NCBI RefSeq assembly: GCF_021869535.1
Contig: NW_026262690.1
Location: forward strand, 36,518,001 to 36,582,000
From: Mytilus californianus
Lineage: Eukaryota
Direction of reading: 5' to 3'
Length of the DNA: 64,000 nt
Shown here piece by piece: positions 14,487 through 54,799 of the stretch (position 1 is its first letter; the number at the start of each line of letters is the position of its first letter). The translations under genes were made by a program, and so were the position numbers. Under the pieces are notes generated by a model, which had not been told where the DNA came from, made no database searches, and was given only the letters and a program-made list of their open reading frames with translations.

Positions 14487-17400
14487 CGGGGCGTATGTTT
14501 GGTCGTCGTTTTGGGCGCTCCAATAATCCTAATTACCTAACAGATTTAGTTGGAAAATCAAATGAAGTTCAGATAATTATTGGTTCAGTTACTACAATAG
14601 CTCTTTTAGATACCGGTTCATCAGTTTCCATAATAAGTAGATCATTTTATGATAAACATTTCTTTGAAATACCTATCCATCCAGTTCAAGAAATCTTAAA
14701 AATTGAATGTGCAGATGGTCAAGAACTCCCTTATGAAGGTTTTATTGAAGCAATTATGAACATCTTAGGATCAAGAAGTAAACAGAATGAGGACAATACA
14801 CTGAACAATTGCCTTTTCCTTATCGTTCCTGACAGTAAATACAATATCAATGTTCCAGTTTTGATAGGTACTAATATTTTGTCTTCTTTTATGGAAATTC
14901 TACAGAAAAGATATGGCGAAAGATACCTGCAGCAGGCCGAATTATTTACACCAGTATACATGACCCTAAGATGCTTGACACTTAGAGAAAAAAATCTGCA
15001 AAGACAGAATAATAAACTAGCTGTTATAAAGTCTGCTGAAAAAGAACGAATTACAATAGAAACCAATTCTGAAGTTGTAATATCTGGCTATTTAGACAAG
15101 AAAGTGCCATACCAACCGGTTTGTGCTCTACTGCAGCCAACACAAAGATCATCTATCCCACTTGACTTAGATATTACACCTGCGATAACTTCTTATAGCT
15201 ACAGTAAACATGCTTTTGGAACAACAAATGTACTTATTTCAAATCCTTCGACAAGGACCGTTACAGTTTCACCAAACAGTGTTTTATGTGAACTTCAACC
15301 AGTCCATATTGAAAATATTGAACGATATGACGATGAACAACATCAAAAAGATAACACAGAAGTCATAGAAGGAATAACTATGTGTACAGATGGTCTTACT
15401 CAGACACAGATACAGAAAGGAAAACAACTTGTACAAAAATATGCTGATATTATGTCCAAAGATGACCTTGATATTGGACACAATAAAATGGTTAGACATA
15501 GAATACAGTTAATAGACGAAACTCCATTCAAACAGAAACATAGACGAATACCACCATCAATGTATGAAGAAGTTAGAGATCATCTTCATCTATTATTAGC
15601 AAGCGGAATTATACGTCAATCATTTTCACCATAGGCATCAAATGTAGTTTTATGCAGAAAGAAGGATGGTAAACTGCGCATGTGCGTGGACTATCGCCAA
15701 CTCAATGATAAATCTGTAAAAGATTCACATGCGTTGAATTGAAGAAATTTTAGAAGGGCTTGCAAGAAACAAGTTCTTTACAGTAATAGATATGAAGTCA
15801 GGGTATCATCAGATTGAGATAGAAGAAGATCATAAGGAAAGGACTGCGTTTACAGTTGGCCCGCTAGGCTTTTATGAATATGAAAGAATGCCATTTGGTT
15901 TAGCAAATAGCCCAGCAACATATCAAGGATTAATGGAAACCATATTGATGGACCTAAATTTGAAGATTTGTTTTGTCTATCTTGATGACGTTATAATATT
16001 CTCCAACACATATGAAGAACATTTGAATAGAATAGATCTTGTCTTTAGTCGACTGAGAGAAGCAGGTTTAAAATTATCACCAAAGAAATGTTCTTTCTTT
16101 ATGAGAAAAGTACGCTATGTAGGACACATAGTGTCTGCGGAGGGAATTGAACCTGATCCTGATAAAATAGAGAAGATCAAATCTTGGCCAATACCAACGT
16201 CACCAGAAGAAGTTAGAAAATTCTTAGGTTTTGTTGGCTATTATCGTCGTTTTGTAAAAGACTTTGCAAAGATTACTAGACCACTTACCAATCTTATGCC
16301 AACACCTGTCAAGAAGAAACAAGAGAAAGGAAAGAGAACAAAGAAAGTAGAGAAAAAACCAGAATGGACATGGGGAACAGCACAGGAAGAATCATTCAGT
16401 ACTTTAAAATCTTGTTTAATGACACCACCGGTTTTAGGATACCCGAATTTCAAAAAGCCATTTGAACTTCACACTGATGCTTCGGGTCATGGCCTTGGTG
16501 CAGTTCTTTACCAAGACCAAGACGGATTGAAACGAGTTATTGCATATGCAAGTCGAGGACTAACTAAAGCAGAAAAACATTATCCTGCTCAGCGTTTGGA
16601 GTTTTTAGCGTTAAAATGGGCTATAACTGAAAAATTCAGCGACTATCTGATTGCCTCCACATTTGTAGTGTTCACTGACAACAACCCGTTAACTTATGCA
16701 ATGAAATCTGCAAAATTAGATGCCACCACTCAAAGATGGGTTGCTGCGTTATCTTCTTTCAATTTTGAAATCAAATATAGACCCGCTTCGAGTAATGCAG
16801 ATGCTGATACTTTATCAAGACTGCCAGGAATAGTGTCTGAGAAAGAAGATACAGTTAACTTACAGAATGAAACAGTTAATGCAATCTGCAATATAACATC
16901 GATGCCAGTAATAGAAACAATTTCTTTTTCATCAGAAATAGTTGATAATCTTGCAGATCCAATGACAGGCTTAAAGATAGATTTAGTTGAAATTCAACAG
17001 AAAGATAAAGTTTTAAAATATTGGATAGATAAAGTACAAATAGGTCAAAAACCACTGAAGATAGATATTCCAAAGACACCTGAATATCATGCTATGTATA
17101 AAAACTTTGAAAAGCTACGCTTAAGTGAAGGAGTTCTACAAAGAACCATTACAGATAGCATCAGCGGGGAAAAAGTCAACCAACTAGTCATTCCATCATC
17201 ACACCGTTCTATGATATTAAAATACCTTCATGACGAAATGGGACATCAGGGTAGAGACCGTACACTATCATTGGTCAAAGATAGATTTTACTGGTATGGA
17301 CAGACAAGAGATGTAGAAAATTATATAGCTGCTTGTGGAAGATGCTTACGCAGAAAGACGCCAAGCAGAGATAAGGCTGAATTAGTAACTATTCAAACAT

Positions 17401-18842
17401 CACAACCACTAGAATTAGTCTGCATGGATTTTCTTGGTTTAGAAACATCAAAAGGAGGGTACCAGTATATTCTTGTTATCACAGATCATTACACCAAGTA
17501 TGCTATTGCTATACCAACTAAAAACACTACTGCTAGAACAACAGCTGAAGCATTTATTAATAATTTTGTTGTTCACTACGGATTTCCACATCGTATCCAC
17601 AGTGACCAAGGTGCAAACTTTGAAGGCAAGTTAATGAAAGAGCTCTGTGATATAACAGGAATGAAGAAATCAAGAACTACTCCATATCATCCCATGGGTA
17701 ACGGAGTATGCGAAAGATTTAATAGAACCTTGATTAGTATGTTAGGAACACTCAATCCAGACCAGAAGAAAGATTGGAAATCCCATGTTGGGACAATGAC
17801 TCATGCCTACAACAATACAAGACATGACACTACAGGATTTACTCCTTATAAATTAATGTTTGGTCGAGACGCAAAGTTACCAGTAGATGTTATTTTTTCA
17901 ACAAAATCACCAGATACCAGTAAAGTCCCTGTTACTAGATATATCAAAGATCTGAAAGAACGAATAGACACTGCATATAAATTAGCATCAGAAACAGCTA
18001 AAAAGTCTCAACAAAAGCAGAAAGAATCATATGATTTAAAGAAAATGGGATCTATTATTCATGAAGGTGATACAGTACTAGTTAAAATAGTAGCCTGGGA
18101 CGGAAAACACAAATTATCAGACCGCTTTGAAGATGAACCATACACAGTACTGAAACAGCCAAACACTGATATTCCAGTTTACACCGTAAAAAGAAAAGAT
18201 GGAGTTGGTAGAAACAGAACTCTTCACAGGAACTTGTTATTACCAATTGGGAACCTATCTGACGGAACCACAGATCGTCATTATGAGGATGAAATCGAAG
18301 ATGAAATCGTCTATACAATTGAAGATTCAAGTACAAGTAGAATTGGTACAACAGATGCACCAGAAAAAGTTCAACTTGAAGTGATTGATACAAGTAATTA
18401 CACAGTGTCAGCAGATGAGCCCTCTGCAACTGACACATGTGGAGAGGATATGACAGGGGACGCCCTATATCCAGAAAATATAGATGATGTTTCATCTCAA
18501 GATATTCATAGAAGCGAGACAGAAACTGAAACCATAACACACGAATCTCCTACTCAAGTACAGCATACAGTTGAGTCAAGTCCACATAGGACTGAACAAC
18601 AGGGCCCTGATGAAGAAATTGAAGATGATGAGTCTGATGGAGAGGATAATTCTGAGAGGAGACCAGTACGGACTAAACGTAAACCAGCCTGGATGCGAAG
18701 TGGTGAATTTGTCATGTTGCAACAGCCAGACTGGATGCAGAAAGCTGAATATTTAAAACGTCTCGCTCTATCTGGAATGTTTCCATCTGCTGAAGAAGAC
18801 TTTGGAAAAGCATTGCTTCGGATTGTGACTGAAAATATGTAG
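14462..18842 (+). pseudogene. pol: Gypsy pol polyprotein (protease, RT, RNase H, integrase) with two lesions
   Basis: Motifs LLDTGS, YLDD, TDAS and LEFLALKWAI, H-X4-H...C-X2-C, and DDE (MDF, SDQG, E). TAG at 15632-15634 replaces the W of SPW. A 5-nt deletion near 15736 (DSHAL[PR]IEE) shifts into the 15792-18842 ORF. Confidence 0.92.
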
Positions 18843-30703: not shown

Positions 30704-33032
30704 AAAAAGAAAAGAGGGACGAAAGATACCAGAGGGACAGTCAAACTCATAGATCGAAAACAAACTGACAACGTCATGGCCAAAAATAAAAAGACAAACA
30801 GACAAATAATAGTACAGATGACACAACATAGAAAACTAAAGACTAAGCAACACGAACCCCACCAAAAACTGGGGGTGATCTCAGGTGCTCCGGAAGGGTA
30901 AGCAGATCCTGCTCCACATGTGGCACCCGTCGAGTTGCTTATGTTATTACAAATCCGGTAAATAGTCTAATTCGGTAAGTCACATTCGTGAAAAGGGAAG
31001 GGTATTGTAGTTACGACATAAGGAACATATCCGATATCATCTGTGAAACGGTTATTCCATAACGGTCAACCAACTCGTGATGTCGTCCGTAAAATTTACG
31101 AAGGGATGACTTCAACTTCACCATTTGGAACTCTTGGTTTAATAGCTTCCTTGTGAGCAGCAATCCTCTATCAAGGAAATCATGATAGGAAACACAAGCC
31201 CGGGAATATCGTATCAATTGGGAGATATATACTCCGTATGCAGGCGCTGCTGGAATGTTGCTACATAGAAATGGAAAGTTCACAATTGGGAAGCTGAAAT
31301 CATCTCTTTTGTCGTAAAGTTTTGTTTTCAACCGACCCTCATTGTCAATTTCTAGATGTAAGTCAAGATATGAGGCAGACTTAACTGTATCTGTAGTATC
31401 CTTTATCTCTAGTTCGATGGGATAGATTCGTTCAACATAGTCACCAAATTTTGTATTATTTAGTGAGAGAACATCATCTATATAGCGGAACGTAGAGTTA
31501 AAGGATATTGCTAACTTCTTATCTCTCTTCCTAAGAAGCTCCTGTATGAAGTCAGCCTCATAATAATAGAGAAACAAGTCGGCAAGAAGAGGGGCACAAT
31601 TGGTTCCCATTGGAATTCCGACAGTCTGTTGAAAAACACGTCCTCCAAACGTAACAAATATGTTGTCAATCAAGAAATCAAGCATCTTGATAATGTCAGT
31701 TTCAGAGAATTTTTTGTTTGAATCAGAGTGATTCTTTACAAAGTAGGATTTATCCCTCCCCAAGACAAGATACTTGTATCTACGTTCGCCATTCTTTTTA
31801 ATGAAACAAAGTAATACCAACTCTTTCAATTTGTCTTTTAGTTTGGAATGGGGAATACTTGTGTAAAGTGTAGAAAAGTCAAATGTTTTAATACTATTGC
31901 AAGATGAGAGAGTCTTAGATTGTATGTACTCTAAAAGATCTTTGGAATTTTTTAGTATCCACATCTGATTCACGCCACTTCTAGAATAGGCAGTTTCACA
32001 ATAACTTTGGAGCCCGGCTTTGATTGCTGATAAAATAGATGTTAATAATTTAGAAAGAGGTTTCGTGGAGCACTTGGAAGACCCAGCAATATACCGTTGT
32101 TTGTAAGGACACTTATGTAGTTTAGGTATCCAATACAGTGATGGAAGATCCAGTTCTTCGTCTTTGGTTGAAATTCCAAAGGAACATAGAACAGACCTAT
32201 GATTATCTAGGATTTCCTCTTTGGTAAGTGTCGTGAGGGTATATGTTGAGTTTCCAAGTGAATTGTCAATACCTAATTCATTTATCAAGCAGTTTATGTA
32301 ATGATATTTACACACAAAAACGATGTTGTTTGGGGCTTTATCTGCGGGGACAACAACATATTTGTCATGGAGGTAGGACAAGTGTCTTGCAACATTTGGG
32401 TCTTTAAAAATTGATGTAGTGTGGGTATTGATATGCCCATTTAGTTTCTTAATTCGGATTTGTATCAACGACCTCACAGCCTTAATCCACTCGGAAAGAG
32501 TATCTACGTCTTCTTTCTCGCGTTTAGCCCATTGCCTGGCATAATCCTCGACTGAATCCATCAGTATTTTGAAGTTGTATTTCCAATTGATGGATTTAGG
32601 CTCACGATATTTCGGACCTTTGGATAACAAATTTCGCAGGGAAGTGTTATCGACAATGTTGAGGTCTCCGGTAATAACGTGGCCAGCCGGATTATATGTG
32701 AATTGGGAACTAGCACAGGTGCAATCAGGAGGTTTAGACTTGAAGTCGTCAATGTTGAGATCCTGCAAAACGTGTTTGTAATTGAAAATTTTAGTTGCAA
32801 TTGGTTTGGTATAGGTATAAGAAATTATTGGTACAGACTGATCTTTAAAATAAGGAGGTATTTTCGACTGAACTAATTTATGATGAAGGATATTGCCTAA
32901 GTTGACGCCATCGAGACCTTTGTTGGCAAAGGAAAGTTTAAGAAAAGATCTTTTCTCTTTTTCATCTTTTCCAATGCGAACTGGTTTGAAAAGTCTGTGA
33001 CTTGCAATATCCGAAATAATGAAGTTTTGCAA
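30704..33032 (-). mobile_element. Naiad-clade Penelope-like element, 5'-truncated (GIY-YIG endonuclease missing)
   Basis: Contains the 673-aa ORF and a ~300-nt 3' UTR. The CxC linker N-terminal to RT is the diagnostic feature of N-terminal-EN PLEs (Naiad/Chlamys). Confidence 0.88.
31011..33032 (-). CDS. Penelope-like (Naiad) reverse transcriptase, uninterrupted but N-terminally truncated
   Basis: PPDCTCASS..GHVITGD (CxC), KTFDFSTLYTSIPH, GIPMGTNCAPLLADLFL, FRYIDDVL and YDKRDDFSFPIVNFPFLCSNIP..PAYGVYISQLIRYSRAC. The TTG start is not a real initiation codon. Confidence 0.9.
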   Translation of the reverse strand: MQNFIISDIASHRLFKPVRIGKDEKEKRSFLKLSFANKGLDGVNLGNILHHKLVQSKIPPYFKDQSVPIISYTYTKPIATKIFNYKHVLQDLNIDDFKSKPPDCTCASSQFTYNPAGHVITGDLNIVDNTSLRNLLSKGPKYREPKSINWKYNFKILMDSVEDYARQWAKREKEDVDTLSEWIKAVRSLIQIRIKKLNGHINTHTTSIFKDPNVARHLSYLHDKYVVVPADKAPNNIVFVCKYHYINCLINELGIDNSLGNSTYTLTTLTKEEILDNHRSVLCSFGISTKDEELDLPSLYWIPKLHKCPYKQRYIAGSSKCSTKPLSKLLTSILSAIKAGLQSYCETAYSRSGVNQMWILKNSKDLLEYIQSKTLSSCNSIKTFDFSTLYTSIPHSKLKDKLKELVLLCFIKKNGERRYKYLVLGRDKSYFVKNHSDSNKKFSETDIIKMLDFLIDNIFVTFGGRVFQQTVGIPMGTNCAPLLADLFLYYYEADFIQELLRKRDKKLAISFNSTFRYIDDVLSLNNTKFGDYVERIYPIELEIKDTTDTVKSASYLDLHLEIDNEGRLKTKLYDKRDDFSFPIVNFPFLCSNIPAAPAYGVYISQLIRYSRACVSYHDFLDRGLLLTRKLLNQEFQMVKLKSSLRKFYGRHHELVDRYGITVSQMISDMFLMS

Positions 33033-40570: not shown

Positions 40571-43523
40571 CAGTAATGCATTTAGATAAGATATTCTAAA
40601 CCGAAGACTTAACAGTTAAATAAATGATATAAAATGTTATCTGACGACTATTTGGCAACTATCACCGTATGCTTATATCATAGTAACACATGATTTCAGT
40701 CTTGGGCTGGTGTTTGTTACAGAACGAGTTCACAGTTGTTCCATGTGCACGAGAACGAGATAGTAAGGCTTTCGAAGAAGGGCTCTGATCTGAATTCATA
40801 ACAAAATTACATATCGGACTTTATCAAATTTTAAGCCATAATAAACTACGTCTTACTAAATCGTAATATGTCTGAAAAATTGTTAAATGCACATTTTATA
40901 TTGTAATTACTTATGTATAACGTGAATGGACAGAAACCAATAGATGAACTCATTTAACATGTAAAGGGTAATGGTTTAAAGTTTAACGTTGTGCAAGGTC
41001 ACACTGTTTATATACAATATTACTTACATCACGATTGTGTGACACTTTCGGAAAAAAGATATTTGTAGGACTCCTCCACTGTACATAATAAGGGTCACAA
41101 TACGTGACGCCAATTATTTATTTAAAATTTGCATACTTTTCATCAAAATGAACTCGAACCCTATTTATGGCATTGAAGTATGAAAACAGAACTTTAAATG
41201 CTTGATAAAGTATATGTCAATAATCTTGTAAATAAACAATTGAACATTATTTTGAATAGTTTCAATTGCGTTTGACTCATTTTGCAATTGTTTCCATTCG
41301 GTCAATTTGTATTTCAAACATTATATTCACAACATTCTTACGGCTTCGCTGAATCAATATACACAATTAGATCAAAGTATGTGTACCTCTCATTTTAATA
41401 TGATGGTAGTATAGTATCTCTAGCGTCACATGCTTTTTTGCCTGCAATCACGTTAAACAGATTTTAATCAAGGGCAACAGTAGTACTGATTTTCAAATCT
41501 CATATAAAATCCATTAAGAAGATACAAATCAAGGTAAAATGAAAACTGAGGAAATCGAATGAATTTCATAAATAGAAATACAGAGTGCATTTCCAGTTAT
41601 GCATGCATCGCCCGTCATGCGAATCCACACTCAGTCAAAATATCATAAATGTTGAAAATGGAAATGAATATTGATAAGAACGACAATTTATCTAAAATTA
41701 TATATAAATTTTTTGAAACTTAAATATTACATTTCTGAAGTAATGTTACTGTTAAAAGTTCTTGGAGCTTTCATTATAGTTACGATCGAGAACATAGACA
41801 AATTTAAAATGATAAAATGGCTCCAAGGAAAGCGAACATTAAGTTTAAAAGCAGAAATATTGCAGTATTTTGAATTTATTTACTACTCAGCTAGACTCAG
41901 GCAAAACAAAGTATAACCCAAATACCGAACTCTAAGGTAAATCCAAAAAGGGGAAGTCAATAAAAACTGACAAAATCAAACGTTATCAACGAACAGAACA
42001 TGTGAAAAACAACTGTCATATTCCTGACTTGGTACAGGCATTTTCCGAAGAAAATGATGGGTTAAACCTGGTTTTATACCTTTAGATCTTTGAAAACGAT
42101 AAAAACAAAAGTCTGTTCTAAGAGATATAATGTTGTCTCTAGTGACCTTTTTGGTTAAGTATGTAAAAGAAGATGTGGTATGATTGCCAATGAGACAACT
42201 ATCCACAATAGACCAAATGACACAGAAATTATCAACTATAGGTCACCGTACTGCCTTCAACAACTAGCAAAGCCCATACCGCATAGTCAGCTATGTTTGT
42301 GTTGGTTTGTTTTTCTAATCATGGTTATTCAAACAATTTCTTTAATCATAAAAAATCTCTACACAAAAATAATGTAATCCTCTTGATGGGTCATTTGTTT
42401 CTGATGATCGTATGCTTACACTCGTGAGTTGGTAACAAGGATAAATTATTAAGCAAAGTAGTTATGTGGTATTCCACTCTTAACGGAAAAAAATGTTCTA
42501 AGAAAAATCCTGAACTCCAAAGTAAATAAAAAAAAATGGGAGGTCCATGAAAACTGACAAAACCAAACGCTCGACTATGTCAACAAATCGAACGACTGGA
42601 AACAACTGTCATATTTCTGACTTGGTTCAGACATTTTCGAAGTTACTTTCGTTGGGAACAATTGTATGATGAAGAAACACGTGTCTGGTTTACTAAATTG
42701 TAATCCTGGTAAATTTTATGACTTTTTGTAAACTACATCATCATTAAAAGTGCAAGATATTCAAGGGACAGATTCCCATCAAACTATGAATGGCGTCTTA
42801 ACTGTTGGCAGTATTGAGCTATATGAAATTAAAAACAAATTACAAACATAAGGCCAGACCGTACTTTCACAATTATTACCAACATCACGTTGGTGTGATT
42901 ATTGTATTAAAATATGTTTCATCAGGCCAGTCCTAACGATGTAAACAAATCGGACACCATTTTTTTTAATCCCTTTTTTATTCTCTTTTATATCTGTTAT
43001 GTAAACAGGTTCTTTAACAACTGACAAGACTACAGGGCAATAGCACTATAGATAATCACATAGAACATGTACAGAATATATATTTTATTTGGAACAACTG
43101 ACAGACAATGTTTAGTTTTTTAGATTTGACTTTTAATTCAAAATTTTGGGGCTATATTCTGACAACAGACGGCTTTGATCTCGCTATATATTGCTTTCGG
43201 TTCACTATTTTATTTTATTTTCTAATAATGAGTTTAAAAAACCATGTTAGTGATAAGATTCTAACGGTAATGTTTTAACTGTCTTATAATATAATAGATT
43301 TTATATTGAATATTATATTTCTCAAAATGAAAACATTCAAAATATCTTTGATCTCAATTTAAAGATCTAGTTAAACAAATACCGTATCAGGTTTTTTTTT
43401 TAAACGCCCCCAGTTCAATGAAAACGTTTATTCTCTTTTAATTCTTTTGAAATAAAAAACATGAAATCGTGATTTCTTTGAATATAAGTAATACTGTGAA
43501 TGAGAAATTGGCACTCGGTATAG

Positions 43524-43530
43524 TATAAAA
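43524..43530 (+). promoter_or_regulatory. TATA box of the secreted modular-protein gene
   Basis: TATAAAA starting 43 nt upstream of the ATG (context TCAAAATG), with an Inr-like TCA at ~43552. Confidence 0.65.
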
Positions 43531-43566
43531 CTGGAGAAATTTCTCTTCTGATCACCAGGGATCAAA

Positions 43567-43629
43567 ATGAATCTGAAGTTAGTAGTTGTCCTTCTAGGTT
43601 TCTTGTGCATTTCACAAGCCTATCCTAGG
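43567..43629 (+). CDS. Exon 1: signal peptide MNLKLVVVLLGFLCISQA-YPR
   Basis: Basic n-region, hydrophobic core and S-Q-A cleavage site. Strong donor AGG|GTAAGT (phase 0). Confidence 0.85.
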
Positions 43630-45468
43630 GTAAGTTTTTGTTTTATGTTAGTTGTAATTTCTTTATCAATCTGTAATACTGTAATATATTTTTGAATTTG
43701 CCTCGGAAAACACACGAAAAATGCAAAGGATAAAACGTCAAATCTAAATTGAGCCTGTAAAACATAGTTCAGGGTTAGTGGATTCAACCATATAATGGTT
43801 TTTATTTCTTTTCGAAAGGTTTTGTGCTTTTCATTTATAAATTAAAAAGAACACACTTCATCAACAACACGCAGTAAAATAGATCGTCTTATGCACAAAT
43901 ATGAGTGAAAGGTATATATTATATATTTTCCAATCTAATCTGGATGAGTCGGTTGAAAACTATTTTTTACAAATCAGATTTTAACGTATAAAGATTGCAT
44001 CATGGGGGAAAAAATTAACATTTGGTACAACACCAATTGGAACATGAATCAAAAGTGCTTCGTAAAAAAAATAAGCTAAATTAAAATCCATACATTTTTT
44101 TAATAATTTGTCAAAATGTAGTTTATATCATGCTTTTTTCGAAAATATAATAAACAGTATGGGTCACCGGGCATTTTTTTCACGCCACAGGTTGTGCAAA
44201 ATTGTCAGCTTTTGTATAGATTATGCATGGAAACCTCAACTTTGTGTGATAAAATGAAAAATAAACCATAGAATTTTATGATAAAATATGAAAAGATAGC
44301 TCTAATAATATGCTTTCCGATAAGAAAAAGAAAAAAAATGGGTCACCGGACTCGTTTTCTTGCTACATAATAAAATAGGTAAATTCATAAACATGCTATT
44401 ATAAAAGGTACTTGATCTGAGTTATCTCCCCTTATGTTACAAAGTTGAAAAAAAATGAACCAAACAAAAATATTCTGGTTTATTTTTGGTAAAATATAGC
44501 CGTAAAATATGATAAAATACTTAATTTTCTATATTAAATTTGAAAAGTATTACACATGATTTACATATTACTCTCGAAATTTGCACATTTCATTAAAGAT
44601 CTAGACCGATTGTTATCTGCTACTTCAAAATCCAAGATGAAGGAAGACACCACAGCTACCTTAACATATACATGTATGATTTTTTTTCTCAAGTAGGATG
44701 TTTTAAGAGAATTGTCGTTCTTTATTTTGCTATATAAATAATGTGATAATGTGAGATGCGGGATAACTGTCAATGGTGTCAATAAAACATGTCAAGTTTT
44801 AAATTCATTCGATGCAAACAGCAATACACTTAAACATACATTATAGTTATACGCTTTTTTCTACAACAAGTGTTTCTATAAGTGTGTTGTCATTCGTTAA
44901 TGTTTAAAGGCGACCGTTTGCATTGTATGTACTTTGCCATATTATACCATCATTTTGATTCGGTCATTTTTATGGGAGATATGGGACTTTGATAATATTT
45001 TGGACTATCGTCCCACAATGACCCTCGTATATACAACTCCCCAGAAACCGTTTCAGAAAAAATTCTCGGACTAAGTAGGATCGTTTGACATTATATGTAG
45101 TTGACCATATTAAATTTTCATTTACATTCGAACATTTTACGGGAATTATAATACATAACTTTGACCTTATTGGACTATTGTAACATTATTACCCTTGTGA
45201 ATGCCACTCCGTTGAGACCGTTTGACAGACAACTCTCATATTTAGAGTGATTTTTTGCCATCATGTGCAGTTTACTATAATAAACCGTCATGTTGATACT
45301 ACCTTGTTACGGGATTTAAGGGATATTGATCACAATTTACGCATTTGCACGCAGATGGGCCCTCTGTGATTACATGTATTGGTCCTACACCGGTTTCCTT
45401 TTTTTGGAAACAAACAGAATGTTAAAATTATATATCTATAATTTTAACAAATGTTGTGAATTTTACAG

Positions 45469-45550
45469 AATCATCGCCGGCAAGATGGGGAATCTGCTGA
45501 CGAGGATCTCGAAAAACAAATCGAGGAGGAGTTTGAAGAACTCTTGAAAG
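45469..45550 (+). CDS. Exon 2: acidic module A1 NHRRQDGESADEDLEKQIEEEFEELLK
   Basis: TTTTACAG acceptor and AAG|GTAC donor; 82 nt; homologous to exons 5 and 8. Confidence 0.88.
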
Positions 45551-46016
45551 GTACTCGTTTTTTTATAATTGGATGAACCAGAAAAGTGTGTTTAATAATT
45601 TCTTACGTATATATGATCTCAGAATATTTCAACCAATGGTTCAGCATTGAATGCAATCATTTGGTTTCTGGTTTGTTCTGACATAATAATTTGAAATTTT
45701 AGCAATATATCAAAATTTGCATTGAAAATGCAAAGTAATCAAACACAAATCATACTCATAGGATCTCCTTTAATCAACAATTATGTATGGGTTTTGCTCA
45801 TTGTTGAAGGCCGTACGGTAACCTAAAGTTGTAAATTTCGATGTCTGTGATCTCTTGTGGAGAGTTGTCTCATTGACAATCAGACCACATCTTTTTATTT
45901 TTAACATTACAAAGTATGTGTTATAAATTCTTGAATGTAATTTTATAATGTGTTTTAGAAGTTGTTTGTTCATGGCAGTGCCGTATATTATTTTTTTTCT
46001 CATTTTTATCAATCAG

Positions 46017-46094
46017 ATGAAGGAAGACTGAGAAAAGGTGGAAAAGAAAATCAATCAGGAGGTGGAAGAGGCGAAGGAAGACTGGGTAACAAAG
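46017..46094 (+). CDS. Exon 3: Gly/basic module B1 DEGRLRKGGKENQSGGGRGEGRLGNK
   Basis: CAATCAG acceptor and AAG|GTAAAT donor; 78 nt, phase 1-1. Confidence 0.85.
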
Positions 46095-46449
46095 GTAAAT
46101 ATTAATATTTATTGAATAACTAATCCCAAAACTTAAATGTCGAAAAATACTTAACGAATGACTGAACGAAACATTAAGTCAAGAATGCGCGTAGAGCATA
46201 ATTTAATTATCAGTGCTGTTCGGTGACGAGTTGAATGATTTCTTTTCAAATCAACAGCTCAGTAGTCAGTGCTTCAGTACTGACATAATTTATAGCATGA
46301 TGCCTTTCTTAAATTCTGTGTTGATAAATCTACAAATAAGTAGCAAACTAAGGTTCAAATTCAAGTATTCTTTTCTGTCCCTTTTGGTCATATAGCTTTT
46401 CACGTATTCAAGTACTTATATCCCCTGTCTTTCATTTGGGTTTTGAGGT

Positions 46450-46472
46450 GGGGGGGGGGGGGGGGGGGGGGG
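46450..46472 (+). repeat. G23 homopolymer in intron 3, followed by TGAGCGTTCC x2
   Basis: Read directly. Confidence 0.9.
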
Positions 46473-47183
46473 TGAGCGTTCCTGAGCGTTCCTGATTAAA
46501 TTATTTTAAAACATCTCTGTTTTTGATGTAAAGCATTCTAATGAAACCAACAATGTCTATTTCTACACGTGCTATCTTCCTTTTTGACGCAACTTTGCTG
46601 ACAACGCATTATCAACATCTATTGTTGTATAAACTAAAATTACTGTTCACTGAGATTTCCCTTAAATTCTGAACCTGCTATGTTGAAAGTACTTTTTAGT
46701 AGAATTTTAAATATTGCATGAAACAAATCAATTGAAAAACTGGCCATGGCGTTGTAAGTTTCTCTCCGCCTCGTTTTTATAGCCAAATCTGCAGATTCGA
46801 CAAAATGAGAGTAAACAGTAGAAGACAGATATATATGTCAAATGTACATTATGCAACATACACACATGACATTTCCCATTTGTCAACATAATGTATTCAA
46901 AAGTTTTAAACAGTCAGATTTAAATCGGAGGACCAAACATTCCCTTTTGTCATTTTGCCTTTAAAAAATCAGTTGTTCGGACGTTTCAGAGAAGTATTAC
47001 TCAGACAAAAAGCTGAGATATTTTGTCAAGATAAATATAGATTCGTTTTTCCGAGAGTTTTTATCTATGTCATTACAGTTGATATGAAATTGAAGAATAG
47101 AAACTAAGTCTGATTCATATGGTTTTTATGAAACTTCAGTGATTTTATCTTTTTCATGTACCTTGATTTATTCTGTCTTTTAG

Positions 47184-47293
47184 GACCAAAAAGACCAAGC
47201 AGTACGGCAGAGCCAGATCAAAACGACAGACCAGCAAGACCAGAAACAAATGGAGAGAGACCAAAACCCTCGGATATGCCTGTAATGCCAGAG
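47184..47293 (+). CDS. Exon 4: Pro-rich module C1 GPKRPSSTAEPDQNDRPARPETNGERPKPSDMPVMPE
   Basis: CTTTTAG acceptor and GAG|GTAAAA donor; 110 nt; core of track ORF 47156..47392. Confidence 0.9.
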
Positions 47294-47513
47294 GTAAAAG
47301 TTATACCTGTACACTATGTCGAACATGTATGTAAGAGACTGCTAAAACACTTTAATTATAAAGAATTATTAAATATAATTTATGAAACTTAATTACTTTT
47401 CATGTTCGGTCTTTATTTTTGAATATATTGTCAATAAACTTATAGTTTAGGAAACAAAGCAAAATGTTAAAATAATGCATCGATTGTTCTAGCATATAAA
47501 ATAATTTTTACAG

Positions 47514-47595
47514 AATCGTCGGCGAGCATATGAGGAATCTGTTGACGAGGATCTAGAAAAAGAAATAGAAGAGGAGCTCGAAGACTTCTTGAAAG
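47514..47595 (+). CDS. Exon 5: acidic module A2 NRRRAYEESVDEDLEKEIEEELEDFLK
   Basis: TTTTACAG acceptor and AAG|GTACAT donor; 82 nt. Confidence 0.9.
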
Positions 47596-47802
47596 GTACA
47601 TTTTTTCCTATTATTTTGAAGCATCAGAAACGTTTGTTTAATGACTTAGTATGTATATGCTGGATTCTAGGAATAAAGTTAGAAAACCTACACCAAAAAT
47701 TTAGTTTAGCCTAGCAACTATTCTTAAACGATGGAATATAACTGCATAGTGTGATTGTTCATTATAATGTCTTTATTATGGTTGTCATTTCTATTAAACC
47801 AG

Positions 47803-47892
47803 GCGAAGGAAGCTCTAGGAAAGGCGGCAAAGAAGAAAAATTAGGAGGCGGAAAAGACAAAGATAGTGGTAAAGGAAGAATGGGTAACAAAA
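47803..47892 (+). CDS. Exon 6: Gly/Lys module B2 GEGSSRKGGKEEKLGGGKDKDSGKGRMGNK
   Basis: AAACCAG acceptor and AAA|GTAAAT donor; 90 nt. Confidence 0.85.
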
Positions 47893-49648
47893 GTAAATAT
47901 TGATAAATACGGTGCATAACTACTTAATATGTTTTTACTTTTAATATTCACGAACAATTACCCAGATATTGGGGTAATCGTCAATGACCAATCAACCTAT
48001 ACAAAATATCAAAGACTTATAAAAATTGTGTTTTTAACAGGTACATTCTACACTGGTTAATGGATTTTTTGTTTCATAGATTTAACACGTAGTAGGACAC
48101 TTTACATTTTCGATCTTACAAAAAGGAAAACCCACATACATAATTACGAATCTATTATACCCTAAAACATAAGAAGATCTATTCCTATGTGAAGTGTCGC
48201 TGTACTTGGTTCAAATTCTAGAGTACCATTATCCTAACGTACCATTATCCTTCACCGGTATTGTTATAAATAGAATACTTCATGGTTTTTAAAATGATGT
48301 ATACGTTTCCTTTTACGTTTCTTCGATTAATTTAACACAAAAACAATAATCAGAAGAAAACTCGAATGTCATAACATTTCAGTATAACATAGAAAAATAA
48401 TATTGATTGATTGATTTTTTGTTTAAAAGGTTCTAACGGGATCCTATTATTTCTCTTGTCTTTTGATTGTTTGAATAGCAATTTCTCGGAGTTTAAGTAA
48501 TCCGTTGCTGACTTTCCTCATTTTAGTTTCCTTGAATAATTGCTTGAGACAATTGTATCAATTGAAAACACTAAATTACAAAATCATAAAATGTGCTTAT
48601 CAATCTTAAAAATAGGAAGAAGTTTATATTTTTATTCTTTATGCTTAAAAGTCTATCTAAAAAAATATGTGTGATACATGAACAAGTCTTGCTCCATTAA
48701 ACCGGTAGCGTCAACAGAAGTATTTCAAAGATATTATGCACTCCAAGCTAATGGTATTTTTTTTTCCAAATTACGATAACTTAAGTCTTATCTGTAGAAA
48801 CTAAAACACACATATGTTATGACCAGCGTACATAGATGAAAACATATCTGCATCTACCTATATCTTTGTATCTATAAAAGAATTTGGTGAAAGTTTTAAT
48901 AAACTTGTGGTTACGAAACCCCTGACTTAATAAATTACCAGTTATACTAAATTACATTCAGTTAATTATAAACACGACTACAAACACGGGCATAGCAAAA
49001 AAGTTGTGAAATATACACAGGTGCTAAAGGAACATATCACCGTCCAAAAGGGGAAAATTAACAATCGAGAACGAACAATCGTCTCTTTTGTCAAAACCGA
49101 GAACACAATTACAGTTATGTCTTTCGAATGAACTGACTTGACTGAATTTTCTAATAAATCATTGGAAACTTCAGTCAAGTCATGCAACACTTAACATTCT
49201 GCTTCATTCGACCCGGTCTTGAATTTGTATTTGATTGCTACTTCTCAAGAATATCTCCCGAAAAGGTCCAGATTCATTTTTTGGTCGCTTCACCAGAAGT
49301 TATTCTTGAGATGTGCAGAGGAGAGCAATAAAACACGCCCCTGTAAATAACGCAACGAAATGCGAAATGAACGCTACTCTAAACTCCGAAACATACAAAT
49401 GAACCAAAATTTTTAAAAAAACTCACAGAAGAATAACAAAGACTTGAGGTTCCTGACTTGGGACAGAGGCAAAAATGAAAAAAAATAAAGCTTCGAATTA
49501 TGCAATATTTTGGCGTTTTTGCTGCAATTGCATCTTTCTTCGCTTTGTTTTGATTTTCTTATCTCTTTCTCATCTATTTATCTTTTCAGTATTCAACTGA
49601 TTTGTTTTGCATTTTGTAGCAATTTATGCGTTATATTCTTTATTTTAG

Positions 49649-49758
49649 GACCAAAAAGACCAAGCAGTACGGCAGAGCCAGATCAAAACGACAGACCAGC
49701 AAGACCAGAAACAAATGGAAAGGGACCCAAACCTTCGGATATGCCAGTAATGCCAGAG
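49649..49758 (+). CDS. Exon 7: Pro-rich module C2 RPKRPSSTAEPDQNDRPARPETNGKGPKPSDMPVMPE
   Basis: TATTTTAG acceptor and GAG|GTAAAA donor; near-identical to exon 4. Confidence 0.9.
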
Positions 49759-49978
49759 GTAAAAGTTATACATGTACACTATGTCGAACATGTATGTAAG
49801 AGACTGCTAAAAACAATTTAATTATAAAGAATTATTAAATATAATTTATGAAATATATTTACTTTTCGTGTTCGGTCTTTATTTTTGAATATATTGGCAA
49901 TAAACCTGTAGTTAAGAAACAAAGCAAAATGTTAAACCAGTGCATCGATTGTTCTTATATATGAAATAAATTTTACAG

Positions 49979-50060
49979 AATCGTCGGCGAGCATATGAGG
50001 AATCTGTTGACGAGGATCTAGAAAAAGAAATAGAAGAGGAGATCGAAGACTTCTTGAAAG
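49979..50060 (+). CDS. Exon 8: acidic module A3 NRRRAYEESVDEDLEKEIEEEIEDFLK
   Basis: TTTTACAG acceptor and AAG|GTACAT donor; 1 aa different from exon 5. Confidence 0.9.
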
Positions 50061-50327
50061 GTACATGTTTTCATTCAGAAACGTTTGTTTAATGACTTAG
50101 TATGTATATGCTCTGATTTTGTATAACGAATAGAGCATTGAAATAAATCATTTGGTTTACTGTTTTGTACTGACATAAAAGTTTCGGAATTCTAGGAATA
50201 AAGTCAGAAAACCTACACCAAAAATTTAGTTTAGCCTAACAAATATTCTTAAACGATGGAATATAACTGCATATTGTGGTTGTTCATTATAATGTCTTTA
50301 TCATGGTTGTCATTTTTATCAAACCAG

Positions 50328-50417
50328 GTAAAGGAAGCTCTAGGAAAGGCAGCAAAGAAGATAAATTAGGAGGCGGAAAAGACAAAGATAGTGGTAAAGG
50401 AAGAATGGGTAACAAAA
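50328..50417 (+). CDS. Exon 9: Gly/Lys module B3 GKGSSRKGSKEDKLGGGKDKDSGKGRMGNK
   Basis: AAACCAG acceptor and AAA|GTAAAT donor; 90 nt; paralog of exon 6. Confidence 0.85.
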
Positions 50418-52042
50418 GTAAATATTAATAAATACGGTGCATAACTACTTAATGTGTATTTACTTTTAATATACATGAAATATTACCTAGATATTAGGGT
50501 AATCGTCAATGACCAATCAAACTATACAAAATATCAAAGACTTATAAAAATTGTGTTTTTAACAGGTACATTCTACACTGGTTAATGGATTTTTTTGTTT
50601 CATAGATTTAACACGTAGTAGGACACTTTTCATTTTCGATCTTACAAAAAGAAATTACCACATAAATAATTACGAATCTATTATACCCTAAAACATAAGA
50701 AGATCTATTCATATGTGAAGTGTCACTGTAATGGGTTCACATTCTAGAGTAGGACATAACTTACCATTATCCTTTACTGGTATTGTTATAAATAGAATAC
50801 TTCATGGTTTTTAAAATGATGTATACTTTTCCTTTAACGTTTCTTCGATTAATTTACCACAAAAAACTAATCAGAGACCCGAATGTCATAACATTTCAGT
50901 ATAACATAAAAAAAAATAATATTGATAATAGCAATTCCTCGGAGTTTAAGTAATCTGACTTTCCTCATTTTAGTTTCCTTAAATAATTGCGTGAGACAAA
51001 TGGTATCAATTGAAAACATTAAATTACAAAATCATAAAATTTGCGTATCAATCTTAAAAATATGATGGAGTTTATATGTTTTATTCTTCATGTTTAAAAG
51101 TCTATCTAAACAATAATATGTGTGATACATGTACAAGTCTTGCTCCTTTAAACCGGTAGCGACAAAAGAAGTTTTTTAAAGATATTATACACTCCAAGCT
51201 AATGGTATTTTTTGTTTTTCCAAATAACGATTACTTAAGTTTTATCTGTAGAAACTAAAACACGCATAATTTATGACGAGCACACATAAATGAAAACATA
51301 TCTGCATCTACCTATATCTTTGTATCTATGAAATAATTTGGTAAAGGTTTTAATAAATTTGTAGTAACGAAACCCCTGACTCAATAAATTACCAGTTATA
51401 CTAAATTACATTCAGTTAATTTTAAACGCGACTACAAACACGGGCATATCAAACAAGTTGTGAAATATACACGGGTGCTAAAGGAACATATCACCGTCCA
51501 AAAAGGAAAAATTAACAATCGAGAACGAAAAAATCGTCTCTTTTGTAACTTTTTGCATACTTTCTAGCGTCAACTTTGCTTTTACACTTACATCAATGAC
51601 AAAACCGAGAACACAATTACAGTTATGTCTTTCGAATGAACTGACTTGACTGAATTTTCCAATAAATCATTGGAAACTTCAGTTAAGTTTTACAACACTA
51701 AAAATTCTGCTACATTCGACCCCATCTTGAATTTGTATTTGATTGCTACTTCTCCAGAATATCTCTCGAAAAGGTCTAGATTCATTTTTTGGACGCTTCC
51801 CCAGAAGTTATTCTGGTGATGTGCAGAGGAGAGCAATAAAACACTCCCCTGTAAATAACGCTACGAAATGCAAAATAGACGCCACACTAAACTCCAAAAC
51901 ATACAATTAAGCCAAAACTAAAAAAAAAAACTCACAGAAGGATTCAAATATTTCTTTCATTGTTAAGAAGACATGAGTACTTTTTCAAGACTGATTTGTA
52001 TCACCTTCCTTAAACGAAAATACATCCTATTTTTCCTTTTAG

Positions 52043-52272
52043 GACCAAAAAGGCCCCATGGTACAGCAGAACCGGATACGAATGGAGATAGACCAGAAAA
52101 CACGGGAGAAAATGGAGGAAGACCAGAAAACCCCGATAAAAGTCAGGATAAACCAGAAATCCCAGAAGAAAATGAGGGTCAGGATCCTGAAAACAGACCT
52201 AGCGAACAATCAGTAAAACGCCGAAAAATAGCTCTTTATAGAGCTCTTGGTTCTTTATATCGAAGGCATTAA
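52043..52272 (+). CDS. Exon 10 (terminal): extended module C3 plus basic tail ...SVKRRKIALYRALGSLYRRH*
   Basis: CCTTTTAG acceptor; RPKRPHGTAEPD... is homologous to exons 4 and 7; TAA at 52270-52272. Confidence 0.9.
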
Positions 52273-52945
52273 ATGGTAACAAATTAAATACGCTCGATAA
52301 CACTGCTTGTTTATTAAACTTCGAGAAAAAGAAATAAAACAGAAAAAAATCGTCAACAGTTGAAAAACACATTCACACTTTCAAGTAAAATATTAAATTC
52401 ATTGTGAATCCAAAATAAACATGTTTTTTAATGAAAAATCACGAGTAAAATTCTTCATTTGGTAATCTCAATATTCCATCTTCTCAATGGAAAATACATT
52501 TGTATAAGTATTATTCAATTATTGCTTTTTCACATAAATCAGAGCAACAGTAGTTTACAGTGTTCAAATCTCATAACTGAAATCAGAGCATACAAATCAA
52601 GAACAAAAATCCCGAGAAAATCAAATTATCTCCAGAAGGAGTGAGATTGGATGCGTCAACTTGTTATGCATCTCCTGATTTGCATGCATCCCCCTCCATG
52701 CAAATCCACACTCAGACAAAATGTCACTATTAAAAATAAGACACAATATGTAAGGTTACACTTTTTTAAAACTTTCATTAAAATTTCTGATAGAACTGGA
52801 CATCTTTTCCGTTTTAGTTTTACTATTTGGTTACTGCCTTATTGATGATTATCCAAGATACATTGTTCATATATATTGAAAACTCTTGAAAGAGAAAAGT
52901 ATCCGAAATCGCATTTTGTAATAGGCTAAATACATTTTACAGTTG

Positions 52946-53375: not shown

Positions 53376-54799
53376 TACAGTGACATATCAAGGGCAGACC
53401 AAAGGGACAAATGGACCTAGAAGCTCATATTATAACCGAAAATTAGTTTAAATACTTTTCAGATTTTTATTACCGCCCCTTTTTTCGGTGGGCACAACAG
53501 CATATCCTTCTCAATATCCTGGATCCGTCGCTGAATACTAATTCGTTTACTAGCACTTTTGGTTTTATGTTCCTTGTTTTACTTAAATATGGAGAAATGA
53601 TGCATAGATGAAGACATTTGTCCAACGTAAAACTACACTGCTGAATATATCACGGCTTTATTGCTCCCTTAGTAAGAAAACGCAACGGAAAACATGTTTA
53701 TCTTAAAACATTTGTAATTTTGGTTTTCAAAGAAATAACAACATACTTGAAATTTAATTTATTGAAATATACTTAGTATGGCATATAATGCTATCAACAA
53801 CATGCCGCTGATAATACATCATTTCATATAGGCCAACTGTACTATGGGGAAAAGAAGTGCGGTGATGCTGTAAAAACGCTACTTACTTTATTGTAAACCT
53901 TTGTATCCACTAAAGAGAAAAACAAGTACAACTTCTGTAAAGATAATATTACAAGGTAGCTTAACATTCCGTTTGCTATGTATGATCAATTAGATATTCG
54001 AAATCTACTCTTGATAAAGTTTCATATTTCGTTACATGTTTTCAGATACCAGACAACGGACAAGGAAACGATCACAAGATTAAAGATTCAACGACAAACA
54101 AATGACATTTCTATCTTATTTTCATTATTTGCTTCATTAAAAATATTATGTCCATAAAAGCCGTGTTGATTTAATATTTTTTTCTCGAGAAAATGTATCA
54201 CTTCGCCATTTTGAGAATGCCTTCTTATTATTATAAAAGGGTCTGTTGGTATATATTAAGAGTTGTGGTATGAATGCCAATGAAACAACTATCCAACAGA
54301 GTCAAAATGACGTGGATTTGAACAACTATACTAGTATATAAAAATAAAAAGATGTGGTAAGATTGCCAATGAGACAACTCTCCACCAGAGACCAAATGAC
54401 ATAGTTAGCAACTATAGGTCACCGTACAGCCTTTAACATTGGGCAAAACCGATACCGTAAGGTTAGCTATAAAAGACCAAAATCAGAAGCACAAAAAAAT
54501 CCAACTCACAAAGTACCGATCTATGAGTGCTCGCAGTTACTGAAAGCTTGTTCTAAGTCAATAACAACTAATACATAAATCAAGTTCTCCCAGACTAAAG
54601 TATCAATCAGTACACATCCAACGGATTTAATGTAGAGACGTCATTAACAGTTTGGGGAAAAGCATGACAGAGTACGAGTTCATATACTAGTAGTTCTTTT
54701 TGTAAAGCAATAAAACATTGAAATTTATTTTAAACAACCTTTTAAAGCAACTCACTGAAATGTGTGTTTTTGAGTGAAAGGACATCAATACAAGGAGAG

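What the first reader, a model, noticed from the sequence alone, without database searches (positions are those of the whole stretch)
43567..52272. Hidden 10-exon gene encoding an unrecognised secreted A-B-C repeat precursor
Seen: small exons that the ORF track mostly misses splice into a clean 338-aa frame. It comprises a signal peptide, then three rounds of (A) an acidic amphipathic helix DEDLEK(Q/E)IEEE(F/L/I)E(E/D)(L/F)LK with 11-12 D/E in 27 aa, (B) a Gly/Lys-rich flexible block and (C) a Pro/Arg/Asp-rich block, ending in a basic tail. Each module is exactly one exon. There is no Trp, and the only Cys is in the signal peptide. I cannot assign it to a known family; the signal peptide and layout differ from myticalins, mytilins and mussel foot proteins as I know them. 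Inference: either a polyprotein releasing several peptides, or a charge-block intrinsically disordered secretory protein (shell matrix, mucus, gamete coat or coacervate-forming).
Basis: partly seen in the sequence, partly recalled or inferred. Interest (0 to 1): 0.8.

Follow-up and report, generated by a model that had tools for sequence, protein, structure and literature searches.

The report
Mussel secreted charge-block repeat gene
This is a real, transcribed California-mussel gene of ten small coding exons for a secreted, cysteine-free, mostly disordered protein built from three acidic-helix / Gly-Lys / Pro-rich units; RefSeq already holds it under a misleading name, no relatives were found, and its function is unknown.

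Summary
Ten coding exons (43567-52272, + strand), all nine introns GT..AG, join into 1017 nt = 338 aa without a stop. The layout is signal peptide, then A (acidic helix), B (Gly/Lys) and C (Pro/Arg/Asp) modules, one exon each, then a basic tail. Stranded RNA reads cover the exons only. They show the C>A, A>B, B>C and B>last-exon junctions, and an eleventh, non-coding exon at 54046.

The gene is not "hidden". The identical 338-aa protein is RefSeq XP_052104910.1 of Mytilus californianus, named "translation initiation factor IF-2-like". That name is spurious: no Pfam domain passes its cut-off.

The gene is single-copy. No relative turned up in 1.8 billion cluster representatives, three word-index searches, Pfam or PDB.

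The third unit comes from a recent 2.46-kb tandem duplication (C1-A2-B2 to C2-A3-B3). All five exon variants listed from other individuals change the protein, and one breaks the KRRK motif before the tail.

Best reading (inference): an intact, lineage-restricted, disordered block-polyampholyte secretory protein. The main rival is a convertase-processed multi-peptide precursor. Tissue and function remain open.

The parts
43524..43530 (+). TATAAAA box-like motif 37 nt upstream of the ATG (putative core promoter)
   Evidence: Sequence only.
43567..43629 (+). Coding exon 1: start codon and signal peptide (MNLK, hydrophobic core, SQA, then YPR); ends in phase 0
   Evidence: AF2 helix at residues 3-18. 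Identical to the N-terminus of RefSeq model P0001. The cleavage site after SQA is inferred from the -3/-1 rule. SignalP was not available.
45469..45550 (+). Coding exon 2: module A1, acidic amphipathic helix (net -8)
   Evidence: AF2 helix at residues 29-55, pLDDT about 72.
46017..46094 (+). Coding exon 3: module B1, Gly/Arg/Lys-rich (10 Gly, net +4)
   Evidence: Its last 30 nt (46063-46092) form the loose end of RNA reads lying before exon 4 (10 X10 reads and an X1 contig).
47184..47293 (+). Coding exon 4: module C1, Pro/Arg/Asp-rich (9 Pro, net -1)
   Evidence: RNA joint 47293>47514 with 11 reads and an X1 contig.
47514..47595 (+). Coding exon 5: module A2
   Evidence: RNA joint 47595>47803 with 7 reads and an X1 contig. 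AF2 helix at residues 111-139.
47803..47892 (+). Coding exon 6: module B2
49649..49758 (+). Coding exon 7: module C2
   Evidence: Covered by X10 reads (16 reads at 49723).
49979..50060 (+). Coding exon 8: module A3
   Evidence: RNA joint 50060>50328 with 17 reads plus X1 and X5 contigs. AF2 helix at residues 205-231.
50328..50417 (+). Coding exon 9: module B3
   Evidence: RNA joint 50417>52043 with 11 reads and an X1 contig.
52043..52275 (+). Exon 10: divergent C3 module (net -8), then the basic tail KRRK-IALYRALGSLYRRH, stop TAA at 52270-52272; the exon ends at 52275 before a GT donor
   Evidence: A loose end behind 52275 appears in 18 X10 reads and in X1 and X5 contigs. AF2 helix at residues 317-337.
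54046..54163 (+). Exon 11, 3'UTR only. Starts after an AG acceptor. ATTAAA lies at 54136-54141. The end near 54163 is approximate.
   Evidence: The 30-nt loose-end consensus maps uniquely to 54046-54075. Sequence. The X5 contig carries 118 letters beyond 52275. The 3' end is inferred.
47169..49633 (+). First copy of the recent tandem duplication (C1, A2, B2 and their introns)
   Evidence: blastn between units: introns 89-92% identical; exons 95.5-98.8% identical to the second copy.
49634..51940 (+). Second copy of the duplication (C2, A3, B3 and their introns)
   Evidence: pN/pS = 0.39 over 94 codons (6 non-synonymous and 4 synonymous differences).

Best explanation
This is a single-copy, lineage-restricted Mytilus californianus gene with 10 coding exons and one 3'UTR exon. 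It is transcribed from the + strand and spliced as predicted.

It encodes a 338-aa pre-protein. An N-terminal signal peptide sends it into the secretory pathway. The mature chain of about 320 aa has no Cys, and 45% of its residues are charged. It is a block polyampholyte: three acidic amphipathic helices (A, net -7 to -8) alternate with flexible basic Gly/Lys linkers (B, +4 to +7) and extended Pro-rich spacers (C). It ends in an acidic Pro/Glu/Asn stretch and a basic amphipathic helix (+7).

The gene grew by duplication of whole three-exon units, which keep the frame only as a set. The latest step was a 2.46-kb tandem copy of C-A-B.

Most likely (inference) the protein acts largely intact outside the cell or in secretory granules. 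It would serve as a multivalent, electrostatically sticky disordered scaffold that binds cations, mineral or oppositely charged partners, or condenses with itself. This is the usual role of fast-evolving repetitive low-complexity proteins in mollusc secretomes.

Shown: gene structure, transcription, splicing, single copy, lack of relatives, predicted helices and disorder, charge segregation.
Inferred: secretion, absence of extensive processing, and the scaffold or condensate role.
For: - Frame and splice sites.
- Exon-only, strand-specific RNA coverage and GT..AG joints. 3'UTR exon.
- Identical RefSeq model.
- Single locus in the 1.65-Gb genome.
- No relatives and no domain.
- AF2 single-sequence model: helices only at the signal peptide, the three A modules and the tail; B and C have pLDDT below 50. 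The Atlas model has pLDDT 0.41.
- Charged fraction 0.45, and charge segregation exceeds shuffles (z = 3.9; 1 of 2000 shuffles reaches it).
- Basic pairs are not enriched (17 versus 14.7 +/- 2.9, p = 0.27).
- The three PKR motifs are followed by Pro, which by my own knowledge of convertase specificity is unfavourable at P1'.
- KRRK is polymorphic (R322S in 3 of 4 runs).
- The best-conserved element between the old units is the acidic helix (A1/A2: 18 of 27 residues identical), not a candidate cationic product.
- The duplicated exons are more alike (95.5-98.8%) than their introns (89-92%), with pN/pS 0.39. This suggests some constraint.
Against: - No protein-level data, and the tissues of the RNA runs are coded, so the site of action is unknown.
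- Basic clusters sit at every module boundary and are kept between the old duplicates (N[HR]RR at the start of A, PKRP at the start of C). This also fits a processed precursor.
- All five listed exon variants are non-synonymous, so constraint on the C-terminal part is weak.
- E-rich helices are not typical of known acidic (Asp-rich) shell proteins (my own knowledge).
- The signal peptide was judged by eye and from the AF2 helix only.
Confidence: 0.45

Rival explanations
1. Multi-peptide precursor. Proprotein convertases cut at the basic clusters that flank each exon-module (NHRR/NRRR before A, NK[GR]-PKR before C, KRRK before the tail). This would release acidic helical peptides, Pro-rich peptides and a C-terminal 14-residue cationic amphipathic peptide (IALYRALGSLYRRH), with the acidic helices masking it until secretion. 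Candidate roles are host defence or signalling.
For: - A signal peptide followed by repeated units with basic motifs at each boundary, kept between the old duplicates.
- The tail is predicted as an amphipathic helix of net +7 preceded by KRRK in this assembly.
- The nearest language-model neighbours are an apidaecin polyprotein cluster and Sp185/333, but at 0.79 and 0.76, scores that shuffled proteins often reach.
- Very uneven expression between runs (word depth 1022 in X5, near zero in others) would suit a gland- or condition-specific peptide gene.
Against: - Basic pairs are not more frequent than chance.
- Pro follows all three PKR motifs.
- R322S turns KRRK into KSRK in X10, X8 and X5, and R337S lowers the tail's charge in all four runs.
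- There are no Gly-basic amidation signals, and the A and C products would be anionic or neutral, unlike known antimicrobial or neuropeptide products.
- PF00807 (Apidaecin) did not match.
- The acidic supposed spacer is the best-conserved part.
Confidence: 0.33
2. A young, fast-drifting gene without a settled function. It is transcribed and perhaps translated, with its repeats growing and shrinking by unequal crossing-over under weak selection.
For: - No relatives anywhere.
- Five of the five listed exon variants are non-synonymous.
- A recent unit duplication.
- Hints of unit-number differences: joint 47293>49979 in X10 and X5, and no A2- or C2-specific depth in X5.
Against: - Nine clean introns, a conserved module grammar between the old units, and exons more conserved than introns, with pN/pS 0.39.
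- High expression in some runs.
- A well-formed signal peptide.
Confidence: 0.12
3. A true relative of translation initiation factor IF-2, as the RefSeq name says.
For: Only the automatic product name.
Against: No GTPase or IF-2 domain appears at E <= 0.01. The protein has a signal peptide, 338 aa of low-complexity repeats and no folded core.
Confidence: 0.01

Closest known systems
Lineage-restricted repetitive low-complexity secreted proteins of mollusc secretomes (shell-matrix-type RLCD proteins; reviewed in PMC4897951 and PMC5400390, seen by title and abstract only)
   Same: Signal peptide, no folded domain, biased charged/Gly/Pro composition, modular repeats that expand by duplication, rapid evolution, and no homologues outside a narrow lineage.
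   Different: This is a kind, not a homology family. Mantle expression and presence in shell are untested here. The acidic blocks are Glu-rich helices rather than the Asp-rich runs usual in acidic shell proteins (my own knowledge).
Apidaecin-type polyprotein precursors (Pfam PF00807)
   Same: A signal peptide followed by tandem units that each combine an acidic segment, a Pro-rich segment and basic residues. Nearest language-model neighbour (0.79).
   Different: No PF00807 match. The Pro-rich C modules are net neutral or anionic rather than cationic. The units are 90-94 aa across three exons. The neighbour score is within the range that shuffled proteins reach.
Myticalins (Mytilus linear cationic AMP precursors, PMC5577615)
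   Same: Mussel-restricted, secreted, Cys-free mature region, opposite-charge blocks, inter-individual variability.
   Different: Myticalins have a conserved signal peptide (consensus MKGxxLLLLTIxxALCMIxECEG). They carry one cationic peptide, then KR, then an anionic C-terminal extension. They have three exons and form a multigene family. Here the signal peptide is unrelated, the gene has 10 coding exons and three A-B-C units, the basic helix lies at the C-terminus, and there is a single locus.
Sp185/333 (SpTransformer) immune proteins of sea urchins
   Same: Secreted, disordered, built from mosaic repeat elements, variable between individuals. Third language-model neighbour (0.76).
   Different: No sequence match was detected in any search. 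It is a multigene family in another phylum. The resemblance is in style only.

Membership tests
Translation initiation factor IF-2 (the RefSeq product name) | GTP-binding translation-factor domain and IF-2 domains | tested here: not met
   The Pfam scan of P0001 at E <= 0.01 lists only three sub-threshold chance hits (DUF6474, COG2_N, DUF2462), with no GTP_EFTU or IF-2. No PDB sequence match at E <= 1.
Translation initiation factor IF-2 (the RefSeq product name) | Cytosolic or organellar protein without a secretory signal peptide | tested here: not met
   The N-terminus is MNLK, an 11-residue hydrophobic core, then SQA. AF2 places a helix at residues 3-18. SignalP itself was not available.
Myticalins | Conserved signal peptide (consensus MKGxxLLLLTIxxALCMIxECEG) | tested here: not met
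   The signal peptide here is MNLKLVVVLLGFLCISQA. The consensus was read in PMC5577615.
Myticalins | Order of signal peptide, cationic 23-42-aa peptide, KR, anionic extension; three exons with signal and mature peptide on one exon; multigene family | tested here: not met
   10 coding exons, three A-B-C units, the acidic block first, and a single locus versus the description.
Apidaecin polyprotein (PF00807) | Match to the apidaecin peptide profile | tested here: not met
   PF00807 is not among the hits at E <= 0.01 for P0001 or E <= 10 for the single exons.
Convertase-processed multi-peptide precursor (functional class) | Repeated product peptides flanked by cleavable dibasic sites | tested here: inconclusive
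   Basic clusters lie at every module boundary. They are not enriched over chance. Pro follows PKR. KRRK is polymorphic.
Convertase-processed multi-peptide precursor (functional class) | Processed peptides detected in vivo | not testable with these tools
   This needs peptidomics.
Mollusc repetitive low-complexity secreted / shell-matrix-type proteins (a kind, not a homology family) | Signal peptide, low-complexity repeats, predicted disorder, lineage restriction | tested here: met
Mollusc repetitive low-complexity secreted / shell-matrix-type proteins (a kind, not a homology family) | Expression in mantle and presence in the shell or another secreted matrix | not testable with these tools
   Run tissues are coded. 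No proteome data were at hand.

The most novel reading that the evidence does not exclude
A mussel-specific, previously undescribed multi-peptide precursor whose number of A-B-C units differs between individuals. Acidic amphipathic helices would mask a C-terminal cationic amphipathic peptide (and perhaps the Gly/Lys blocks) until convertase cleavage. That would be a new host-defence or signalling peptide family with repeat-number and cleavage-site polymorphism.
Probability: 0.15. Interest if true: 0.6.

Novelty: new member of a known kind. Interest (0 to 1): 0.35.

Why it matters
The gene shows that a well-expressed mussel secretory gene sits in RefSeq under a wrong, composition-driven name (IF-2-like), which would mislead any expression or enrichment study that picks it up.

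As biology, it is a tidy example of exon-unit duplication building a charge-patterned disordered protein, caught with a very recent extra unit and possibly still varying between individuals.

If it turns out to be a matrix or condensate protein, or a peptide precursor, it would add an orphan family to the mussel secretome. That secretome is studied for biomaterials and for mucosal immunity.

None of this is very surprising to a specialist, because fast-evolving secreted low-complexity orphans are common in molluscs.

Tried and rejected
- **Exon-by-exon Pfam scan** and whole-protein scan: only sub-threshold chance hits (COG2_N, Annexin, DUF6474, DUF2462).
- **phmmer of exon 10 against 1.84 billion representatives**: the gene's own product plus two chance hits. 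P0002 is a Culex tandem-repeat hypothetical protein. Each repeat scores only 23 bits, so its library E-value comes from summing 13 repeats. P0003 is an unnamed 2783-aa protein.
- **Word-index searches** with the full length, the C-terminal 75 aa and the N-terminal 111 aa: nothing but self. The low-complexity words saturated the 8000-candidate limit.
- **The look-up of encoding contigs**: no record.
- **PDB sequence search**: nothing.
- **ESM Atlas** by features and by structure: scores within the noise range, so leads only.
- **Literature searches** for the accession, for five peptide strings and for the product name with Mytilus: nothing relevant.
- **Earlier findings of this scan**: nothing at or about this locus.
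- **tRNA scan of the intron repeat**: none, so there is no evidence that it is a tRNA-derived SINE.
- **Unit-number polymorphism or unit skipping.** I considered calling it from the joints 47293>49979 and 47892>52043. I rejected it as proven because A2/A3 differ at 1 of 82 nt, B2/B3 share their 3' ends and C1/C2 differ only in their last 45 nt. Short reads and de Bruijn contigs cannot place those joints uniquely.
- **No hand-joined sequence was searched.** No hand-joined spliced sequence was sent to any search tool. Exons were searched by reference, and full-length searches used the database's own record P0001. Exons were joined only inside scripts that read /data, to check the frame and codon effects.


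Full report
**What is in the sequence.**
Reading 43300-52500 and checking by script, I place ten coding exons on the + strand:
- 43567-43629
- 45469-45550
- 46017-46094
- 47184-47293
- 47514-47595
- 47803-47892
- 49649-49758
- 49979-50060
- 50328-50417
- 52043-52272

Every intron starts with GT and ends with AG after a pyrimidine-rich tract. The exons add up to 1017 nt, which is 338 codons plus TAA with no internal stop. Intron phases run 0, 1, 1, 0, 1, 1, 0, 1, 1. A single A or C exon is therefore not frame-neutral, but a whole three-exon unit (270 or 282 nt) is.

Exon by exon the product is:
- a signal peptide (MNLK, hydrophobic core, SQA);
- three A modules of 28 aa with 12 Asp/Glu each;
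- three B modules of 26-30 aa with 8-10 Gly and net charge +4 to +7;
- two 36-aa C modules with 9 Pro each;
- a longer, divergent C3 (net -8);
- an 18-aa tail of net +7.

There is no Trp, and the only Cys is in the signal peptide.

**It is transcribed and spliced as predicted.**
One search for runs (last exon plus flank) found holders labelled with one organism, and one marine metatranscriptome with a small share. I laid four runs on 46500-52499.

X10 is stranded RNA-seq raw reads, of which about 6% were read. It covers exons 4-10 at depth 4-16 and the unique intron sequence at zero, almost all with the first mate on the - strand. In the usual stranded libraries that places the RNA on the + strand.

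GT..AG joints are seen at:
- 47293>47514 (11 reads)
- 47595>47803 (7 reads)
- 50060>50328 (17 reads)
- 50417>52043 (11 reads)

Contigs of two other studies (X1, X5) agree. Reads ending before exon 4 continue with 30 letters that map uniquely to the end of exon 3 (46063-46092), so junction 3>4 is supported too. X8 covers introns and exons evenly and is DNA.

Junctions 1>2 and 2>3 lie outside the stretch laid. Junctions 6>7 and 7>8 are not among the rows displayed, although exon 7 is covered (16 reads at 49723).

**An eleventh exon.**
Eighteen X10 reads and contigs of X1 and X5 leave the genome just after 52275, three bases past the stop, where a GT follows. They continue with a sequence that maps uniquely to 54046, directly behind an AG. 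The rest of the 3'UTR is therefore a separate exon. An ATTAAA lies at 54136-54141, and the X5 contig carries 118 letters beyond the junction. The transcript probably ends near 54163 (inferred).

**It is not unannotated.**
I searched the spliced model exon by exon, by reference, and sent no hand-joined sequence to any search tool. The exhaustive phmmer search with exon 10 returned a 338-aa protein, P0001, that is letter-for-letter the spliced model.

P0001 is RefSeq XP_052104910.1, [quoted passage not shown], on a 127-Mb contig. The window therefore comes from the California mussel. The gene is already a public model, and an independent annotation pipeline reached the same ten coding exons.

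The name is spurious. Pfam finds no GTPase or IF-2 domain, only three sub-threshold chance hits. PDB sequences give nothing.

**No relatives found.**
- In the 1.65-Gb genome, the A, C and last exons match only this locus.
- Among 1.84 billion cluster representatives, exon 10 finds only its own protein and two chance hits. One is a Culex tandem-repeat protein whose E-value is inflated by 13 repeats of a 23-bit match.
- The word-index searches with the full length (186-591 aa candidates), the C-terminal 75 aa and the N-terminal 111 aa find nothing else. The 90% cluster has one member.

Caveats apply. The A, B and C modules were not searched exhaustively on their own. Orthologues above 50% identity could be hidden in P0001's own 50% cluster, though would then have shown them if they are 186-591 aa long. 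No tool here reaches other mytilid genomes. "Taxonomically restricted" is therefore likely but not proven.

**How the gene was built.**
A blastn comparison of the units shows that 47169-49633 (C1, A2, B2 and their introns) and 49634-51940 (C2, A3, B3 and introns) are tandem copies. Introns are 89-92% identical and exons 95.5-98.8% identical. The coding part has 6 non-synonymous and 4 synonymous differences, giving pN/pS 0.39.

Both copies carry the same insertion of a dispersed repeat of about 255 bp, with thousands of copies in the genome. The duplication is therefore younger than that insertion.

The older layer is A1-B1-C1 / A2-B2-C3:
- A1 and A2 share 18 of 27 residues.
- B and C3 are much more diverged.
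- The motifs N[HR]RR, DEDLEK.IEEE, EG..RKG.KE, GNK and PKRP..TAEPD survive.

**Variation between individuals.**
The five exon differences listed all change the protein:
- G194R
- N306D
- Q318R
- R322S, which turns KRRK into KSRK (in X10, X8 and X5, not X1)
- R337S (in all four runs)

Joints 47293>49979 and 47892>52043, and the lack of A2- and C2-specific depth in X5, would fit alleles or isoforms with one unit fewer. The near-identity of the units makes these placements ambiguous, so I leave this open.

**Predicted structure.**
AF2 without an alignment (mean pLDDT 53.6, pTM 0.22) gives helices only at five places:
- 3-18 (signal peptide)
- 29-55, 111-139 and 205-231 (the A modules, pLDDT 70-78)
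- 317-337 (the tail)

The B and C modules fall below 50. The Atlas model agrees (pLDDT 0.41).

The mature chain has a charged fraction of 0.45 and net charge -7. Its opposite charges are more segregated than in shuffles (z = 3.9; 1 of 2000 shuffles reaches the observed value).

**What it most likely does.**
Two readings fit: an intact disordered scaffold, or a convertase-processed multi-peptide precursor.

For processing:
- Basic clusters stand at every module boundary and are kept between the old units.
- The tail looks like a cationic amphipathic peptide behind KRRK.

Against processing:
- Basic pairs are no commoner than the composition predicts (17 versus 14.7 +/- 2.9).
- Each PKR is followed by Pro, which I recall as unfavourable at P1' of convertase sites. 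This rests on my own knowledge and was not tested.
- KRRK and the tail's charge are polymorphic.
- There are no amidation signals.
- The A and C products would not be cationic.
- The most conserved element is the acidic helix.

I therefore put the intact block-polyampholyte scaffold first (0.45) and the precursor second (0.33). A drifting young gene without a settled function gets 0.12. The language-model neighbours (apidaecin polyprotein 0.79, Sp185/333 0.76) are within the noise range and serve only as leads.

**Comparison with known families.**
- It is not a myticalin. The signal peptide, module order, exon structure and copy number differ from the definition in PMC5577615.
- It is not an apidaecin (no PF00807 match).
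- It is not IF-2.
- It belongs to the loose kind of fast-evolving, repetitive, low-complexity secreted proteins that are common in mollusc secretomes. Its tissue and matrix are untested.

**Verdict.**
The gene is real and expressed but already annotated, under a wrong name. It has no detectable relatives, and its function is unknown. Interest is moderate to low (0.35).

Noticed in passing
window 49089-49346 (core), within 48960-49440; second copy within 51414-51943: A dispersed repeat of about 255 bp sits in the B>C intron of both duplicated units. The genome holds at least 3092 first-look candidates at about 77-81% identity, DNA word depth in X8 reaches 1.8e5, and RNA reads are present at low level. 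ARAGORN finds no tRNA-like part.
   Followed up: partly
window 14495-18842 (+): Two adjacent long ORFs of a Ty3/gypsy-type LTR retrotransposon. One is 379 aa with a weak gag-aspartyl-protease hit. The other is 1016 aa with RT, RNase H, integrase zinc-binding and integrase core domains. Observed only.
   Followed up: partly
window 31011-33032 (-): A 673-aa ORF with a weak reverse-transcriptase match (RVT_1, E = 2.5e-5, below the Pfam cut-off). It is probably another retroelement remnant.
   Followed up: no
window 46450-46472: A run of 23 G in intron 3, followed by a short direct duplication (GAGCGTTCCT twice).
   Followed up: no
window 52171-52266 and 49723: All five exon variants listed from other individuals are non-synonymous (G194R, N306D, Q318R, R322S, R337S), and 52266 G>T is fixed in all four runs. 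The assembled haplotype may carry the rarer allele at the tail.
   Followed up: partly
window 47293>49979 and 47892>52043 (joints): Reads and an X5 contig (word depth 1022) join C1 directly to A3 and B2 to the last exon. X5 shows no A2- or C2-specific depth. X8 DNA depth is lower over unit 2 (about 17-56) than over unit 3 (about 36-65). This would fit an allele with one unit fewer, but near-identical units make the placement ambiguous.
   Followed up: partly
run X6: A marine metatranscriptome holds 17% of the sampled words of the last exon. Mussel RNA (larvae, gametes or shed cells) may be present in that sample.
   Followed up: no
P0002: A 923-aa Culex quinquefasciatus hypothetical protein made of tandem repeats of about 68 aa matched the tail at library E = 1.6e-9. 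Each repeat scores only 23 bits, so the match comes from repeat summation and is not homology.
   Followed up: yes
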